A program made the translations under genes and the position numbers. From Saccostrea cucullata (taxonomy: Eukaryota): DNA of 64,000 bases. A model generated the notes under the pieces. The model ran no database searches and was not told the DNA's origin. It saw nothing but the letters and a program-made list of their open reading frames with translations. Of this stretch, positions 48,401 through 57,400 are shown one piece after another. The stretch is taken from positions 1 to 64,000 of the forward strand of contig NW_026930107.1 in the NCBI RefSeq assembly GCF_032062105.1, in the 5' to 3' direction. How positions within the stretch are numbered: position 1 is the first letter of the stretch; the number at the start of each line of letters is the position of its first letter.

Positions 48401-51400
48401 ACCAGCGAGATTAAAACAAATGACGACAATTCTCTTATGTGGGAGGTAGGAATGCTATTAAATCTCTACATTTTTATTAATTAAAATCGACAGACATGTT
48501 CATTTTACAGATTGCAATACGATATGAAATTTTCGGAAAATTATTAAATTTCTTACAAAAATTACAATCATTTACTTAATTTAAACACACAAAAAATTAA
48601 ACACAAAAAATTCCGCTCTGGCTAATTTTTAACGTGGATAAAAATATATTTATCACTCTAACTATGTATATTTTGTCTCCTGTGCCCTTTCCCCGGAAAT
48701 AAATTCAAGTTTAAGCAACAGTTGTAGAATTTTGTATTTTTTCTATACTTTTCTGCGTCTCTGTATACGTGACCAAATAAGATTTACAGCCTGTTTGTTA
48801 GGACATCGGTTTCACCGTTTGAATACAAGAAAAACGATACCTCTCTTGGTACAGTCTTTTTCGATTTGAAATACAAAAGACCAAGATTAAACGAATATTA
48901 CTTACAACACCTGCAGTGTTGACATAATATCTGTCTATTTAACACAAGTACTTGATGGAAAGCAGCTGTTTGCTTACACTTCATTACTATTTGTAGTACA
49001 GAATGGATGTCTGAAGTAAGCTCTACCATAGTCTGTATAAACCAGGACACACGCGGCTCTAAATCTCACATTTGTAAGCACGCCTCAAGAGCTCGAATTA
49101 AGTGTAACCAAGTAAAGAATCGTCAAAATAAATATTTAATTCGATACTGCACACACCATTTATTCGCGAATTGTTCATATGACAACTCTGTATTTGGATT
49201 GGGGTCGGGATGTTTGCCTACATTGTATGACTTCAAGTTATCGCGAGCCCGATTACCAAATTTCAAGTGGTTAAAGAGACATTTATAGACATTCGTGCAA
49301 TTGACGGTAAAAGAACGTGTTGACAATTCAGGATGTTAATAATCTTTTGACAAACAGTGTTCCTTAAATTGTCTACTTCTTTTTGCAGTTGATCACACCA
49401 TGTGGGACAATCTTGCTTAATCCTGCAATATATATCTTTTAGTAGACTATCAATAATGCGATATAAGTGGCAGAAAAACTATAGCATCACCTCTAAATAC
49501 AGACTGCAAAATTGTCATAATAATTTTTCGAAATTCTTACAAAAAATAATTATAAATATTAAAAAAAAATCCAAACAAAACACTGAAGCGATACTACATA
49601 ATTTACACTCAATTTGAAAAAAGGTTAAGCATCCGTTCTTTTTACAGCAAAGTAAAATTAAAGTTTACATTCCCTTTCCTGGTCCGCGATCCCGTGCGTT
49701 GGGTGTTTTGCTGAAGGGACTCCGCAACATGTTGTAGTATCTTACCCATGACGTTTTGCCCCGGCCATGCCTTGGGTTTGGTGTGCAACGTTTGCGTAGA
49801 GTTGAGACCGGTTCCCCAGTACTGGTCGTACACGGAATGCGCAAAGATCTTTTCGTTAGTATATACCTGTATAATTTTCTTTTTCATCTCAGATACTTGT
49901 TTCACTTTTTCAAGCACAATTTCCTCCATGACCTTAGGCGCGTCCTGTTGCCAGGATCCGGATGCTTGGACGGATTTACCGATCTGTTTGCATTCCAGTG
50001 CAGATTTTGCTGCTCGGATCTTCTCCGCTGCCATAAGATCGCCTGCTCGCACTGCCTTAGTGACCTGGAATGCTTGCTCGGCGGAATTAAAAGTTTCCCC
50101 GAACACTTTGAGATCACACGCAAAGAAATTTGATATTACATTTTCCTGACCATCGAACGCCTCAACTTCCTTAGAATTGTCTTCGATGTATTGCGGACAG
50201 AGATCGGATCCGGGTTTATGGCCTGCGTCCTTGCAAGCAGAACACCGCGGATTGTTTTGGCACAATTTGAAAGAATGACCAGTTTCCCAGCAATTTGTGC
50301 AGGTTATTGGAGGTTTTTCGAAATTTTGCCCTCGATGGAAGATCTTACATCGAAGGCCTGCGCAGTAGCTGAAACGAGGCAGGGCCTTGTTTTGCTCAAG
50401 GGGTTCTATATAAAGGAATCTGTTGCCATTTAGAACGTTGGTCATTTTATTTGTTGTAGGATTTCTAATCTTTTCGAATTTAATTTCGCTTTTTGGATGC
50501 ACTCCTAGCTTATTGAGCATGTCATGTATAGCGGAATCGTCCACAGAAAGTGGAATGCCGCATATCGTAACTTTCAGGACTGGGTCTTCTGGATCAGTAA
50601 GACCAGCTGAGTAGGGATTCGATTCGTACACTCTCACATGTTGGTTGTTGAGATCAAATCCGTCAATGATAAGTTTATCTCGACTTTGTTTATCATTTAA
50701 GTAGATTCGCCAAAGGTCACGGTCCAATTGGACGCATTTAACCGTGTCCCCGATTGTTACGCTTACTGCATCTAATAAACCAAAGTTTGTAATTCTTTCA
50801 TTGTTTGATTTTGGCAGTTCACTGTCTTTTAGAAAAACTGGTTTCATTAATTTGTCCATGTTGTATACGGACGAAGTTCAATGAATGCCACAAGTTTTGA
50901 AATACTTGGATAATAGTAGTGAGTAGATACTCACCGGTGTGTCGTATAAACACGTTGAGAAATCCTCACAAAAGTCACAAAAGTTTCAACTTGAAATGCA
51001 AATAAATAGGTAAATATCACAAACATTCACACTATATACACTTTTCGCGCAGAAATCTGCACTCCAGAAGCGTTTAAACTTCCAAAATTGTCAAAAAGAC
51101 GGGAGCTAGAAGAAAAGCGTCCTTCCACCTACTCGTCACGTGACATCATGCGTAAAGAAGGTTCGTAAAGAAGTCTGGTAAATCAAATAAATAAAATTTA
51201 ATTATTAACCCAAAACACGACCAAGACTATGGCTTGTGTTAAGTTTTTATCTCTGAACTGTAGAGGGTTAAATAGTAATGATAAAAGAGTAATTTTGTAT
51301 GAATGGTTTAACTGTCAAAAATGTGATATTATTTTATTACAGGAAACACACTTTGTTGATAAAAAGCAGAGTATCTATGATTCGAGGTGGCATGGTTCTG

Positions 51401-54400: not shown

Positions 54401-57400
54401 AAATCTTAATATATAACAAGTCCGAAAAGCCTATCATGGAAAGTTTTTGGGAAAAGGAATTTAGCGATATAAACCCACTGTGTTGGCGAAAAATATATGA
54501 AGAAAAAATTGTAAAAATTAATGACAAAAATATTGCCGAATTCAATTTTAAACTACTGCACAATATGTTACCAAATAACTTGTATCTTAGTAAATGGAAT
54601 AAAAATATTGAAAAATATTGTTCTCATTGTCAAGAAATAGAAAATACAAAACATATGCTTTTTGACTGTATACTTATAGAAAATATTTGGAAACGAGTGT
54701 CTGTTGTACTTAAAGTTAATATTGTTTGGAAACATCTTGTATTGGGTTTTAGTTACTATGGAAACCAAACAAGCACAGTTTTGAATAATGTTGTTTCTTT
54801 CATAGCATTTAAAATTTTTAAATATAAGATGAAATGTAAAATATTAGAAGAAGATATAACAAGTGATGGGCTTAATTTATTTTTGAAGTCATCGCTTGCT
54901 AACTTTTACTTTGTTAATCGGCAAGCACAAACTATCAAATTTGATTATTGTATGCTAAAAACTCTGTCTGAAAATTTGTAAATTATTATTTTTTATTATT
55001 ACTAATAATTTTTTTTTTATTCATCACTCACTACAGGATTAGCCAGTAATCTTGTATTTCGGAGGTAAATTTCTGATATGGACTCTGTGGTGTGTAAGGA
55101 TTGTACCTCCGAATTCGTGAGTGGTCCATCGTCTTATTATATGACATATAAGAAAAAAAATTCATATATATTATAGTAAGAATGTATGAAGTAACAATGA
55201 GTATTAATATTTTTTTAAAGACACAATCCATATATATAACTATATGAATACCTTTAAAAATATTTTTTAATCTATATAATTATATTCTTTGTATATTAAT
55301 ATACATATATGTTTTAAATTTCCAATCCAGGGGGCCCCTGGCACCCCAGGTGAGGAATACACGGAGGACCTCTTAGGAGGTATTGCCTCAAAACTTGACT
55401 TGTATTTTTGTTGAATAAAAACTCTGAAAAAAAAAAAAAAAAATTAAAGTTTAATGAGATAAGAAAACGCGATTTAAACTGTTATGAATAGGAACAACGA
55501 CGATAGCATTATATCACTGCTTACTCCAGAACAACTTTCATTTTTTTTCTTTTTTTTTGGCAATTATGTATATATTTATATACATGTAAGCCAATTATCG
55601 GCCCGCTGTCTAATTTTTTCAATTTCCATTTTAATGATATGTTACTAGCCTTTAGACCAGCGTATGGCTGAAAAATTGTATTGCAATAAATCGTTGAAGG
55701 TTTTGGGTTTGCTCTTGTTGAAAAAAATACACTGCAGCAATTATGATGGATTTTTCTAAACTCTTTGCATGTATCCCACATGATATAACTAAAGATGTTT
55801 GACTAGTACCACGGTGTCCCAAAAGGTTCAATACTTAATAGCTTGGTCCTGTTTTATACATGTATTTATGTACAAATACATACTATCCTTTATATATATT
55901 TAGAATGATCGATTGCTGCTATTATAGTAGTATATACAATGTACATAATGATAATATTATATTTCAAAGATATTCCAAGAGGGCAAACTCAGTCACTTTA
56001 TTGATGGTCGAGGAAATGCGGGCGGATGGATGTCCTTCGTAAATTGTGCTCGATATGCCCAGGAACAAAATATGACGGCAATCCAGATCGAAGGTGATAT
56101 TTACTACGAAGCCTGCAAAGACATTCCGAATGGCACAGAACTCCTTGTGTGGTACGGAGACTGTTACCTCCAGTTTATGGGTGTACCTGTTTCCTTAAAA
56201 GAAATGGCGGACGGCGGGGCACAAGAAGAATCGGAGAGTAAGTATGACGCCTCAATCATCATTTCAGATTTTATTCAGATGACATGAAGATGATATTACG
56301 ATAAAGGCTACAAATGAAAAGAACAAAACGAACTGAAAACACATCACTGACATTGACACTGAAGTTTACTAGTTTAAAATTAAATTTACACAAAGAAATA
56401 TTTCGTAACTGAATTCATATATATAAGATGTACATTAAATTGATTTAGCATTATTAACTTACTCTATTGTGGCTCTAAAGTCTTAAAACATGATGAAAAA
56501 ACGGTGGTGCGGCAGAGGCGCCAGTTGAGATCTTGAATGCAGGAGAAACACTGAATAGTAACACTGAATAGTAACACAAGTAGTATTCGGACTGAAACAT
56601 TTCACTCGGACAAAAACGGAAAACACTAGGAAACAAAAAAACAGTCTACGAACATATATACATATAAGCCGTGTAACGGCACAGGAAGACTATTCAATTA
56701 TCACAAATTTCTATGTTCTTAAAGCGTCAATTATTGTTGAACTACTAGACTAGTATGTCTCCAAACATTAATAAATCATCAAAATGAGAACAAGCTTTCA
56801 CGACTAATGCCATTAACTGTTAAGGCCAAAAAGTTGGGGCTATGTGTAGTGAAAATTAAATTCATTTTCAAAATCATTATTTTATCTACCTGTTTTTACT
56901 TCAAAATAATATAAGATTGTTCTACAACCTATAATACAATTATAAAATTATCAATAATGATGCAAAATTATCAGCAAGGACTATTTGTAGTCACAATTAA
57001 ACTCGATTTATGATCGTGAATAACGAATATTAAAAGATTATCAAATTTTAAAATTAATATTTTAAAATATTAGAATTTTAATTATACGTCAAGAAAACAT
57101 ATAAAATTGTCTCAGAAACAAGAAATATAAAATTTTATACTTTTTATTTTTATTTTCTCCCAGCAACCGGAGAGGGTTACCAGTGTGAAAGATGCGGCAA
57201 AGTTTTTGCTTATAAATATTACCGTGACAAACATCTGAAATATACACGGTGTGTAGATCAAGGAGACCGCAAATTCCCCTGTCACCTATGTAGCAGGTAA
57301 GTTGAGTCAATGTCTTTTGCATATATATGTTATTTCTGATATCTCATGTCAATTTTAATATTTGTTCATTTTTCAAGATATTTCTCATCCTTGTAATGTC

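What the first reader, a model, noticed from the sequence alone, without database searches (positions are those of the whole stretch)
49642..55439. An intact L1/Tx1 retrotransposon whose ORF1 protein carries a NADAR (guanine ADP-ribose hydrolase-family) domain: candidate transposon anti-defence system
Seen: after the RRM-like region and two CCHC knuckles, residues ~235-381 of ORF1 (nt ~50160-49716) show the ordered NADAR/YbiA motifs SNF, (S/T)xE.xFQxxK, K..G, W...M...K..Q, D.YWG.G and G.N.(L/M)G..L. Both ORFs are uninterrupted and the TSD is perfect, so the family was recently active with this domain in place. Established: NADAR proteins are N-glycosidases. YbiA/RibX act on riboflavin intermediates, and the DarT1-NADAR antitoxins remove ADP-ribose from guanine in DNA. 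NADARs also occur in phages and some nidoviruses. Bivalves have pierisin-family guanine ADP-ribosyltransferases (CARP-1 of the clam Meretrix). Known LINE ORF1 add-ons are mainly PHD, esterase and knuckle domains; I do not know of a described NADAR-ORF1 fusion but cannot search to confirm. Inference: ORF1p coats the element RNA in many copies and would carry the enzyme to the RNP/TPRT intermediate, where it could erase or bind host ADP-ribose marks on element RNA or cDNA. This would parallel viral macrodomains countering PARPs, and implies a nucleic-acid ADP-ribosylation defence against retroelements in molluscs. Caveat: the usual Glu of the 'LVE.s..D' motif appears as His (FAHSVYD) and the terminal Arg as Ala, so substrate or activity may be altered.
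Basis: partly seen in the sequence, partly recalled or inferred. Interest (0 to 1): 0.93.

Follow-up and report, generated by a model that had tools for sequence, protein, structure and literature searches.

The report
Inverted oyster LINE copy with NADAR ORF1
This is a rearranged, non-autonomous copy of an oyster jumping gene (an L1/Tx1-type LINE) whose RNA-binding protein ends in a well-conserved NADAR enzyme domain of the kind that strips ADP-ribose from DNA and RNA bases. The fusion is real and under strong selection, it has already been mentioned for Pacific-oyster Tx1 elements in a 2025 paper, and its function has not been tested.

Summary
The NADAR domain is real: Pfam PF08719 matches at E 1.5e-25, and the AlphaFold model (pLDDT 93.6) matches Phytophthora NADAR 8BAU at TM 0.78 and YbiA at TM 0.75. 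It is the C-terminal domain of a LINE ORF1 protein built of two RRMs, two CCHC knuckles and NADAR.

The window copy is not an intact element. ORF1 lies on the minus strand and ORF2 on the plus strand. Sibling copies show that 49668-51147 is an inverted 5' segment. It is joined to the direct segment at 51160, with 30 nt lost and a 12-nt filler. One perfect TSD (ATTAAAGTTTA) flanks the whole structure, which is the signature of twin priming. ORF1 lost its last 22 codons.

Canonical tandem ORF1-ORF2 copies exist elsewhere in this genome, which is Saccostrea cucullata. The family has hundreds of copies at 42-98% identity. NADAR dN/dS is 0.04-0.27, as low as in the RRM region.

The Glu-to-His change marks one ancient clade and is invariant within it. 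His occupies this site in active phage NADARs.

Novelty is limited. Genome Biol 2025 (PMC12477816) already notes NADAR in ORF1 of Crassostrea gigas Tx1 LINEs. The anti-defence reading is plausible but unproven, and no pierisin- or DarT-like host enzyme was found. The scan also flagged another copy in this genome (s1-700954).

The parts
49657..49667 (.). Left target-site duplication ATTAAAGTTTA. It extends to 49654 if the preceding A's are counted.
   Evidence: The identical 11-mer follows the poly(A) at 55443-55453.
49668..51147 (-). Inverted 5' segment of the element. It holds the full 5' UTR and ORF1 minus its last 22 codons.
   Evidence: blastn shows 97-98% identity to siblings L013, L004 and L002, in the opposite orientation to the ORF2 part. 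Three siblings end at 51145-51147, which marks the element's 5' terminus.
49642..50859 (-). ORF1 as open in this copy (405 aa). Its last 8 codons and stop (49642-49667) come from the TSD and flank.
   Evidence: Sibling L013 ORF1 is 418 aa with a different, family-conserved tail.
50335..50859 (-). Tandem RRM region of ORF1p (about residues 1-175).
   Evidence: The AlphaFold model has pLDDT 89. Foldseek matches two-RRM proteins (hnRNP A1 UP1, Sxl, HuR) at probability 1.0.
50197..50301 (-). Two CCHC zinc knuckles (residues 187-221).
   Evidence: C187, C190, H195, C200 and C206, C209, H214, C221 are invariant. A profile search matches retroviral nucleocapsid knuckles.
49714..50145 (-). NADAR domain (residues 239-382).
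   Evidence: Pfam PF08719 at E 1.5e-25. Model pLDDT 93.6. Foldseek gives TM 0.78 to 8BAU and 0.75 to 2B3W. dN/dS is 0.04-0.27.
50860..51147 (-). 5' UTR of the element, inverted.
   Evidence: Homology to siblings runs up to their 5' TSD boundary.
51148..51159 (.). Filler at the inversion junction. It partly duplicates the adjacent CGTAAAGAAG.
   Evidence: It has no counterpart in siblings. The 10-mer occurs at 51152-51161 and again at 51165-51174.
51160..55442 (+). Direct 3' segment: the remnant of the ORF1 tail and inter-ORF spacer, ORF2, the 3' UTR and the poly(A) (55427-55442).
   Evidence: blastn shows 97-98.5% identity to L013 6770..2717. Thirty nt of the sibling (6771-6800) are absent between the two segments.
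51229..54981 (+). ORF2, 1250 aa, open. It has an AP-endonuclease (aa 7-230), an RT (aa 512-765) and a zf-RVT (aa 1072-1154).
   Evidence: Pfam. The best PDB match is human L1 ORF2p at 7.5e-80.
55443..55453 (.). Right target-site duplication ATTAAAGTTTA.

Best explanation
Window 49668-55442, flanked by an 11-14-nt TSD, is one retrotransposition event of an L1-superfamily (Tx1-like) LINE of the oyster Saccostrea cucullata. It went through twin priming. The 5' UTR and ORF1 were copied in inverted orientation, and ORF2 to the poly(A) in direct orientation. Thirty nt were lost at the breakpoint and a 12-nt filler sits at the junction. The copy therefore cannot make the bicistronic RNA and is non-autonomous, even though both reading frames happen to be open.

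The family's ORF1 protein has two RRMs, two CCHC knuckles, a C-terminal NADAR domain and a short basic tail. The NADAR domain is an ancient, selectively maintained part of ORF1p (shown).

The most likely mechanism is inferred. ORF1p binds the element's RNA through its RRMs and knuckles, and so concentrates an active NADAR N-glycosidase on the RNP and on the single-stranded cDNA made during target-primed reverse transcription. There the enzyme removes ADP-ribose from guanine or cytosine bases that would otherwise block reverse transcription or second-strand synthesis. The ADP-ribose could come from a host ADP-ribosyltransferase, an environmental bacterial pierisin-family toxin, or PARP activity.

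My odds: structure and twin priming about 0.95; NADAR as a functional, selected part of ORF1p about 0.9; catalytically active about 0.6; substrate is base-linked ADP-ribose on the element's own RNA or cDNA about 0.3-0.35.
For: Twin priming and family structure:
- The two ORFs lie on opposite strands.
- The inverted and direct blocks, with breakpoints 30 nt apart in siblings, are seen.
- One TSD flanks the whole structure.
- The target reads TTTT/A on the bottom strand, typical of L1-type endonuclease.
- Eight other copies have ORF1 followed by ORF2 on one strand, 49-130 nt apart.
- An RNA-library contig joins 49668 to 51160 across strands with the 30 extra letters, which is the canonical form.

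NADAR identity:
-.
- E261 (matching E43 of 8BAU) is at least 90% conserved. K268 (matching K50) is invariant. W303, D345 and W348 align to the ADP-ribose contacts W89, D130 and W133.

Selection:
- In the 7 informative (unsaturated) pairs tabulated, NADAR dN/dS is 0.04-0.27. In the same pairs the RRM region gives 0.01-0.21.
- 78 of 104 scored ORF1 copies have no stop, out of 708 first-look candidates.
- 352 clusters at 50% identity match the domain profile at E<=1e-30.
- Homologues are named in Pinctada, Magallana, Ostrea and S. echinata.

His variant:
- His341 sits on one branch with 100/99 support and is invariant in 17 rows, while position 340 varies.

Biochemical precedent:
- Eukaryotic and YbiA-type NADARs remove G- and C-linked ADP-ribose from ssDNA and ssRNA, and phage NADARs with His at this site are active.
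- NADAR in animal RNA-virus polyproteins has been proposed to counter host ADP-ribosylation.
Against: - No enzyme assay exists for any LINE NADAR.
- In ungapped alignments the family's Glu/His lies one residue after the catalytic Glu of 8BAU and YbiA: 7 rather than 8 residues before the conserved Trp (the W of YWG). Ala or Val occupies the canonical position, so the equivalence is unresolved.
- The pyrophosphate contacts R79 and R93 of 8BAU are not conserved.
- No pierisin-like or DarT-like transferase was found in this genome. The PF03496 scan gave two weak hits. The one examined is an arginine-ART-like ORF with no PDB match to pierisin, and the DarT scan was blank.
- RNA support is thin: 1-5x depth, and DNA carry-over in the contig library cannot be excluded.
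Confidence: 0.6

Rival explanations
1. One reading: an intact, autonomous L1/Tx1 element with ORF1 and ORF2 in working order.
For: Both frames are open, the TSD is perfect and a poly(A) is present.
Against: The ORFs are on opposite strands. Relative to every sibling, the 5' UTR and ORF1 are inverted, 30 nt are deleted, and the ORF1 tail is replaced by flank sequence.
Confidence: 0.02
2. The NADAR domain is active but works on small molecules or RNA-end by-products, such as soluble ADP-ribose derivatives, products of RNA repair or KptA-type reactions, or NAD-derived signals. It does not act on base-linked ADP-ribose of the element's own nucleic acids.
For: YbiA acts on small riboflavin intermediates. 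Iyer et al. propose soluble ADP-ribose derivatives and RNA-repair by-products as NADAR substrates in many viruses. The 2025 paper suggests RNA processing of the transposition intermediate.
Against: Fusion to an RNA-coating protein makes most sense for a polymer-bound substrate. Every eukaryotic NADAR tested so far de-ADP-ribosylates G or C in ssDNA or RNA.
Confidence: 0.2
3. The NADAR fold has been co-opted as a non-catalytic module. It would bind ADP-ribose or nucleic acid, or promote oligomerisation, taking the place of the C-terminal domain of L1-type ORF1p.
For: The canonical position of the third catalytic acid is Ala or Val. R79 and R93 equivalents and the C-terminal Arg are lost.
Against: The catalytic Glu and Lys and the Trp/Asp ribose-phosphate contacts are (nearly) invariant over lineages whose synonymous sites are saturated. 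The Glu/His site is fixed within clades and covaries with residue 262 next to the catalytic Glu.
Confidence: 0.13
4. These are two unrelated insertions lying head to head, or an assembly error, rather than one twin-primed event.
For: Head-to-head TE pairs are common in repeat-rich genomes.
Against: The same 11-nt TSD bounds the outer ends. The inner breakpoints are only 30 nt apart in the source element. Both blocks are 97-98.5% identical to the same siblings.
Confidence: 0.03

Closest known systems
Tx1 LINE families of Crassostrea (Magallana) gigas in Repbase whose ORF1 proteins carry YbiA-family NADAR domains (noted in PMC12477816, Genome Biol 2025)
   Same: The host group (oysters), the LINE type and the domain in ORF1 are the same. 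A M. gigas NADAR protein fragment is 51% identical to the window ORF1.
   Different: This is a different species. The paper gives one sentence and an alignment figure. It has no selection analysis, no catalytic-site analysis, no copy census and no structure. I could not compare directly with the Repbase entries.
Twin-primed (5'-inverted) human L1 insertions (Ostertag and Kazazian 2001, from my own knowledge; reviewed in PMC10760644, listed but not read here)
   Same: One TSD surrounds an inverted 5' block and a direct, polyadenylated 3' block. There is a small deletion at the internal breakpoint and a TTTT/A-type nick site.
   Different: Here the inverted block reaches the element's very 5' end, and the breakpoint falls in the last 22 codons of ORF1, so both ORFs stay open. 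A 12-nt filler sits at the junction.
Phytophthora nicotianae NADAR (PDB 8BAU) and E. coli YbiA (2B3W)
   Same: The fold is the same (TM 0.78 and 0.75). The catalytic Glu and Lys and the Trp/Asp ADP-ribose contacts are shared.
   Different: Those are stand-alone enzymes. In the LINE domain the third acidic or His residue is shifted by one position, and R79 and R93 are not kept.
Phage orphan NADAR antitoxins and DarG1 NADARs that reverse DarT1 guanine ADP-ribosylation
   Same: A mobile element carries a NADAR. His at the variable catalytic site is shared with phage NADARs. The logic is one of counter-defence.
   Different: The LINE case has no known cognate transferase. It is eukaryotic, and the domain is fused to an RNA chaperone rather than free-standing.
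Macro and NADAR domains in polyproteins of animal positive-strand RNA viruses, including bivalve picornaviruses (PMC9503650)
   Same: An ADP-ribose-removing domain is embedded in the replication machinery of a selfish RNA-based replicon of invertebrates.
   Different: Those are viral polyproteins, whereas this is a LINE ORF1p. Whether the domains are related by descent was not tested.
Type II LINE ORF1 proteins (RRM plus CCHC), and ORF1 proteins with PHD or esterase add-ons (Khazina and Weichenrieder 2009, from my own knowledge; Metcalfe and Casane 2014, PMC4120745, listed but not read here)
   Same: The core is two RRMs plus CCHC knuckles, and ORF1 evolves by adding and swapping modules.
   Different: The added module is NADAR. 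Related NADARs also occur with GDSL-esterase and PHD modules in metagenome proteins of unknown context.

Membership tests
NADAR superfamily (PF08719) | Profile match above the curated cut-off | tested here: met
   90.7 bits against a cut-off of 35.1, E 1.5e-25, residues 239-382 covering model positions 10-162 of 163.
NADAR superfamily (PF08719) | YbiA-like alpha+beta fold | tested here: met
   Model pLDDT 93.6. Foldseek gives 8BAU at E 1.2e-7 and TM 0.78, and 2B3W at E 1.6e-7 and TM 0.75. The next hits are at E>1.
NADAR superfamily (PF08719) | Catalytic Glu and Lys (E43 and K50 of 8BAU; E88 and K95 of E. coli C7 NADAR) | tested here: met
   E261 and K268 align to them. K268 is invariant and E261 is at least 90% conserved in 45 sequences.
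NADAR superfamily (PF08719) | Third catalytic residue at the E125 position (Glu in the YbiA type, Asp in DarG1, His in phage NADARs) | tested here: inconclusive
   The family has Glu (E clade) or His (window clade) 7 residues before the conserved Trp (the W of YWG). 8BAU, YbiA and the stand-alone relatives have Glu 8 residues before it.
NADAR superfamily (PF08719) | N-glycosidase or de-ADP-ribosylase activity | not testable with these tools
   This needs a biochemical assay.
L1 superfamily LINE (L1/Tx1) | ORF2 with an N-terminal AP-type endonuclease, an RT and a C-terminal Cys-rich domain, closest to L1 ORF2p | tested here: met
   Pfam finds Exo_endo_phos, RVT_1 and zf-RVT. Human L1 ORF2p matches at 7.5e-80 over aa 4-878, against R2 at 1e-16.
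L1 superfamily LINE (L1/Tx1) | Poly(A) tail, a variable TSD and an A/T-rich nick site | tested here: met
   A 16-17 A tail. The TSDs are 11-14 nt here and about 14 nt in L013, with different sequences. The nick site reads TTTT/A.
Tx1 clade specifically | RT phylogeny grouping with Tx1 reference elements | not tested
   No reference LINE sequences were on hand. The Tx1 label rests on PMC12477816's description of the C. gigas Repbase families.
Tx1 clade specifically | Sequence-specific insertion, a feature of many Tx1 members | tested here: not met
   The two insertions compared (window and L013) have unrelated target sites. Only two sites were examined, and not all Tx1 members are site-specific.
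Twin-priming product | A single TSD around an inverted 5' block and a direct polyadenylated 3' block, with breakpoints adjacent in the source element | tested here: met
   the TSD lies at both outer ends, 30 nt are missing between the blocks, and a 12-nt filler is present.

The most novel reading that the evidence does not exclude
Bivalve cells, or microbes they are constantly exposed to, ADP-ribosylate guanine or cytosine bases in retroelement RNA or single-stranded cDNA as a restriction mechanism. This LINE lineage has carried an ORF1p-tethered NADAR eraser for hundreds of millions of years as the counter-measure. If so, the Glu-type and His-type clades would reflect adaptation to different modifications. 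That would be the first evidence for base ADP-ribosylation as an anti-transposon defence in animals.
Probability: 0.2. Interest if true: 0.85.

Novelty: new member of a known kind. Interest (0 to 1): 0.55.

Why it matters
NADAR enzymes were only recently shown to erase ADP-ribose from guanine and cytosine in DNA and RNA. The authors of that work state that endogenous base ADP-ribosylation in eukaryotes has not been found (PMC12945103).

A LINE family that has kept a NADAR domain on its RNA-coating protein under selection as strong as on its RNA-binding domains, across at least two bivalve families, argues that a NADAR substrate matters for retrotransposition in these animals. This gives a concrete, cheap biochemical entry point: express the domain and test it on G- and C-ADP-ribosylated oligonucleotides. 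It also gives a natural Glu/His contrast to exploit.

For genome annotation, these ORF1 copies are currently labelled 'N-glycosidase YbiA-like' or 'uncharacterized protein' in oyster gene sets and should be masked as transposon genes. The copy in this window is itself an ordinary dead-on-arrival insertion.

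Tried and rejected
- A single-sequence search with the NADAR part alone found only fragments of the same family plus one distant stand-alone protein.
- The profile version again gave mostly bivalve ORF1 fragments, so the source of the domain (host gene, virus or bacterium) is not resolved.
- The ESM Atlas feature search scored 0.83, below the level that means anything.
- The listing of cluster members gave no names or taxa for 10 divergent representatives.
- The contigs of the NADAR+esterase proteins were too short to show an ORF2, and the esterase part is absent from this genome. 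The idea that NADAR also sits in ORF1 of other LINE clades therefore remains only a lead.
- The host transferase search was inconclusive. PF03496 gave two weak hits. The one examined, L043, is an arginine-ART-like R-S-EXE ORF (PF01129) with no PDB relative; the other, L044, was not examined. PF14487 (DarT) gave nothing, but its control genomes were also blank, so that says little. I had no pierisin or CARP-1 sequence or profile to scan with.
- A supplement search of PMC12477816 did not give the names of the C. gigas Tx1 families.
- Model coordinates are not exposed, so I could not measure whether H341 or A340 occupies the E125 site.
- I rejected the idea that ORF1 is a host gene, because there are 708 candidate copies and they lie next to ORF2.

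Full report
**What is at the coordinates**

The region holds two long open frames, and they face away from each other. A 405-aa ORF runs on the minus strand (50859 down to 49642), and a 1250-aa ORF runs on the plus strand (51229-54981).

Pfam places a NADAR domain (PF08719) at residues 239-382 of the first ORF, with E 1.5e-25 and 90.7 bits against a cut-off of 35.1. It places endonuclease, reverse transcriptase and zf-RVT domains in the second. The description of an intact element does not.

**The copy is a twin-priming product**

The ORF1 protein has at least 104 scored matches in the window's own genome, out of 708 first-look candidates. They range from 42% to 100% identity, and 78 of the 104 have no internal stop.

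In all eight copies that I extended, ORF1 sits directly upstream of ORF2 on the same strand. L016 and L017 show open 407- and 392-aa ORF1s followed by open 1245- and 1239-aa ORF2s, 84 and 49 nt apart.

The comparison with siblings gives the following structure:
- blastn against the 97-98% siblings shows that window 49668-51147 matches in the orientation opposite to window 51160-55439.
- In sibling L013 the two blocks are contiguous except for 30 nt (L013 6771-6800). Those 30 nt lie in the last 22 codons of ORF1.
- The inverted block ends where three siblings also end, which is the element's true 5' terminus.
- Twelve bases (51148-51159) at the head-to-head junction have no counterpart in siblings. 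They partly repeat the neighbouring CGTAAAGAAG.
- The 11-mer ATTAAAGTTTA occurs immediately left of the inverted block (49657-49667) and immediately after the 16-17-A tail (55443-55453).
- The inferred bottom-strand nick site reads TTTT/A.

One TSD around an inverted 5' block and a direct polyadenylated 3' block, with internal breakpoints 30 nt apart, is the textbook signature of twin priming. That mechanism is established for human L1 (my own knowledge). It excludes both two independent insertions and a misassembly.

The consequences are as follows. The window ORF1 has lost the conserved basic tail, and its last eight codons are read from the TSD and flank. ORF2 has no upstream promoter or ORF1 in cis. 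The copy is non-autonomous even though both frames are open. The nearest siblings are themselves damaged: L013 ORF2 is in pieces, and L020, L004 and L010 carry frameshifts or stops.

**The host**

The best public match, P0001 at 98% identity, is annotated in Saccostrea cucullata, on a contig of exactly the length of the window genome's contig C13194. Named homologues come from Pinctada imbricata, Magallana gigas, Ostrea edulis and Saccostrea echinata. The family is therefore shared by oysters and pearl oysters.

**The protein**

- An AlphaFold model of residues 1-232 (pLDDT 89) shows two beta-alpha-beta-beta-alpha-beta units. It matches two-RRM proteins such as hnRNP A1 UP1, Sex-lethal and HuR at probability 1.0.
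- Two CCHC knuckles follow, with invariant Cys and His residues, and they match retroviral nucleocapsid knuckles.
- The model of residues 226-396 (pLDDT 93.6) matches Phytophthora nicotianae NADAR bound to ADP-ribose (8BAU, TM 0.78) and E. coli YbiA (2B3W, TM 0.75). Nothing else scores below E = 1.
- ORF2 is closest to human L1 ORF2p (7.5e-80 over residues 4-878), far ahead of R2 proteins (1e-16). The element thus belongs to the L1 superfamily.
- The Tx1 label rests on the literature, not on a tree made here. The two target sites I could compare are unrelated.

**Active site**

A profile of 45 family members aligns to 8BAU and YbiA. Using the residue roles given by Schuller et al. 2023 (PMC11543638):
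- E261 corresponds to catalytic E43.
- K268 corresponds to K50.
- W303, D345 and W348 correspond to the ADP-ribose contacts W89, D130 and W133.
- K268 and W348 are invariant, and E261 is at least 90% conserved.
- R79 and R93 have no conserved counterpart.

The third catalytic position is the interesting one. Most lineages read F-(A/V)-E-x-T-x-D. The window's clade reads F-A-H-S-V-Y-D.

On a maximum-likelihood tree of 33 ORF1 sequences, the His state maps to one branch with 100/99 support. It is invariant in all 17 members, which are down to 54% identical, while the preceding residue varies among A, S and G. It also covaries with residue 262, next to the catalytic Glu: Gln in the His clade, mostly His in the Glu clade.

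Both Schuller et al. and Mikolcevic et al. 2026 (PMC12945103) state that this site is Glu in YbiA-type NADARs, Asp in DarG1 NADARs and His in phage NADARs. The latter paper's table lists phage NADARs among the guanine-ADP-ribose hydrolases.

One caveat remains. In ungapped alignments the family's Glu/His lies seven residues before the conserved Trp (the W of YWG), not eight as in 8BAU, YbiA and five stand-alone relatives. I could not obtain coordinates to decide the structural register.

**Selection**

Nei-Gojobori estimates on codon alignments give the following for the NADAR part:

| Pair | NADAR dN/dS |
|---|---|
| Window vs 84%-identical copy from another assembly (dS 1.4) | 0.077 |
| L034-L035 | 0.054 |
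| L027-L029 | 0.073 |
| L019-L031 | 0.082 |
| L014-L007 | 0.13 |
| L017-L025 | 0.037 |
| Window-L013 | 0.27 |

The RRM region gives 0.01-0.21 in the same pairs. Between subfamilies the synonymous sites are saturated, while dN stays at 0.15-0.5. The domain is thus as constrained as the RNA-binding core, and has been so for a very long time.

An exhaustive profile search found 352 clusters at 50% identity with E<=1e-30. Of the 142 new top representatives, 56 share the RRM/CCHC N-terminus.

**Expression**

Two oligo-dT RNA-seq runs of the same species label gave 1-5x coverage over both ORFs, and 28 of 80 reads in one run were at least 99% identical. An RNA-library contig of 1486 nt carries the canonical ORF1-to-ORF2 junction including the 30 nt missing here. 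This is weak but consistent evidence that the canonical form is transcribed. It says nothing specific about this locus.

**Mechanism**

Shown:
- ORF1p is built as an RNA-binding chaperone plus a NADAR fold with a conserved active site.
- The domain is selectively maintained.
- Related NADARs hydrolyse guanine- and cytosine-linked ADP-ribose on ssDNA and ssRNA (literature).

Inferred:
- ORF1p brings the enzyme to the element's RNA and nascent single-stranded cDNA.
- There it removes base-linked ADP-ribose that would block copying.

The source of such marks is unknown. A Pfam scan for C3/iota-type ARTs found two weak hits. The one I examined is an arginine-ART-like ORF with no solved relative. 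A DarT scan was blank, with uninformative controls. I had no pierisin or CARP-1 profile to use.

Alternatives are listed with odds under Rival explanations: action on soluble ADP-ribose derivatives or RNA-end by-products, as proposed for many viral NADARs, or a non-catalytic binding role.

**Novelty**

A full-text search found one relevant paper. Its study of Ectocarpus transposons (PMC12477816, 2025) reports NADAR domains in a Gypsy lineage. It adds that the ORF1 proteins of several Tx1 LINE families of Crassostrea gigas in Repbase also contain YbiA-family NADAR domains, possibly for processing the RNA intermediate.

No other paper combines NADAR, DUF1768 or YbiA with ORF1 or LINEs. The fusion is therefore documented in passing, and the present case is a new member of it in another oyster.

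- the selection data;
- the copy and cluster census;
- the structure models;
- the Glu/His clade split;
- the correction that this particular copy is 5'-inverted.

The scan's first stage also flagged another copy elsewhere in this genome (s1-700954).

**Leads not followed to the end**

Close relatives of the LINE NADAR occur in metagenome proteins together with a GDSL esterase and a PHD finger (P0155, P0195, P0214), or with a TatD nuclease (P0222). Esterase and PHD are known LINE ORF1 modules, so NADAR may be shuffled among ORF1 types. However, the contigs are too short to show an ORF2, and the esterase part is absent from this genome.

**Verdict**

The finding is of moderate interest. It is a solid, testable case for a role of base de-ADP-ribosylation in animal retrotransposition, but the fusion itself is already in the literature and the locus itself is an ordinary dead copy.

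Noticed in passing
window 56030-56287 (+): An 85-aa open frame matches the PR/SET domain of PRDM proteins (PRDM2_PR, E 7.5e-22). The LINE probably sits in or next to a PRDM-like gene.
   Followed up: partly
proteins P0155, P0195, P0214, P0222 (loci L045-L047): Metagenome proteins whose NADAR domain is close to the LINE type are fused to a GDSL esterase (and a PHD finger in P0155) or to a TatD nuclease. Esterase and PHD are known LINE ORF1 modules, so NADAR may occur in other ORF1 architectures. The contigs are too short to see an ORF2.
   Followed up: partly
ORF1 residues 262 and 341 (window about 50074-50076 and 49837-49839, minus strand): The His341 clade has Gln at 262. The Glu341 lineages mostly have His at 262, next to the catalytic Glu261. 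This may be compensatory covariation inside the active site.
   Followed up: partly
L017 1652-2686 (+), own genome C23157: A 344-aa ORF with a WWE domain (an ADP-ribose-binding fold, E 8.7e-17) lies about 1.2 kb from another copy of the LINE family. This is probably coincidence.
   Followed up: no
L043 (own genome C12276:1071966-1072394, minus strand): An ORF with an R-S-EXE ADP-ribosyltransferase signature matches PF01129 (E 1.5e-8) and PF03496. It has no solved relative by sequence, and its target is unknown.
   Followed up: partly
window 51152-51174: The 10-mer CGTAAAGAAG occurs twice, 13 nt apart, at the inversion junction. The first copy lies in the filler, which suggests template switching or microhomology use when the two cDNAs were joined.
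   Followed up: partly
proteins P0090, P0091 and P0001 (public annotations): Oyster gene sets annotate copies of this transposon ORF1 as 'N-glycosidase YbiA-like' or 'uncharacterized protein'. These models are transposon genes, not host riboflavin-pathway enzymes.
   Followed up: no
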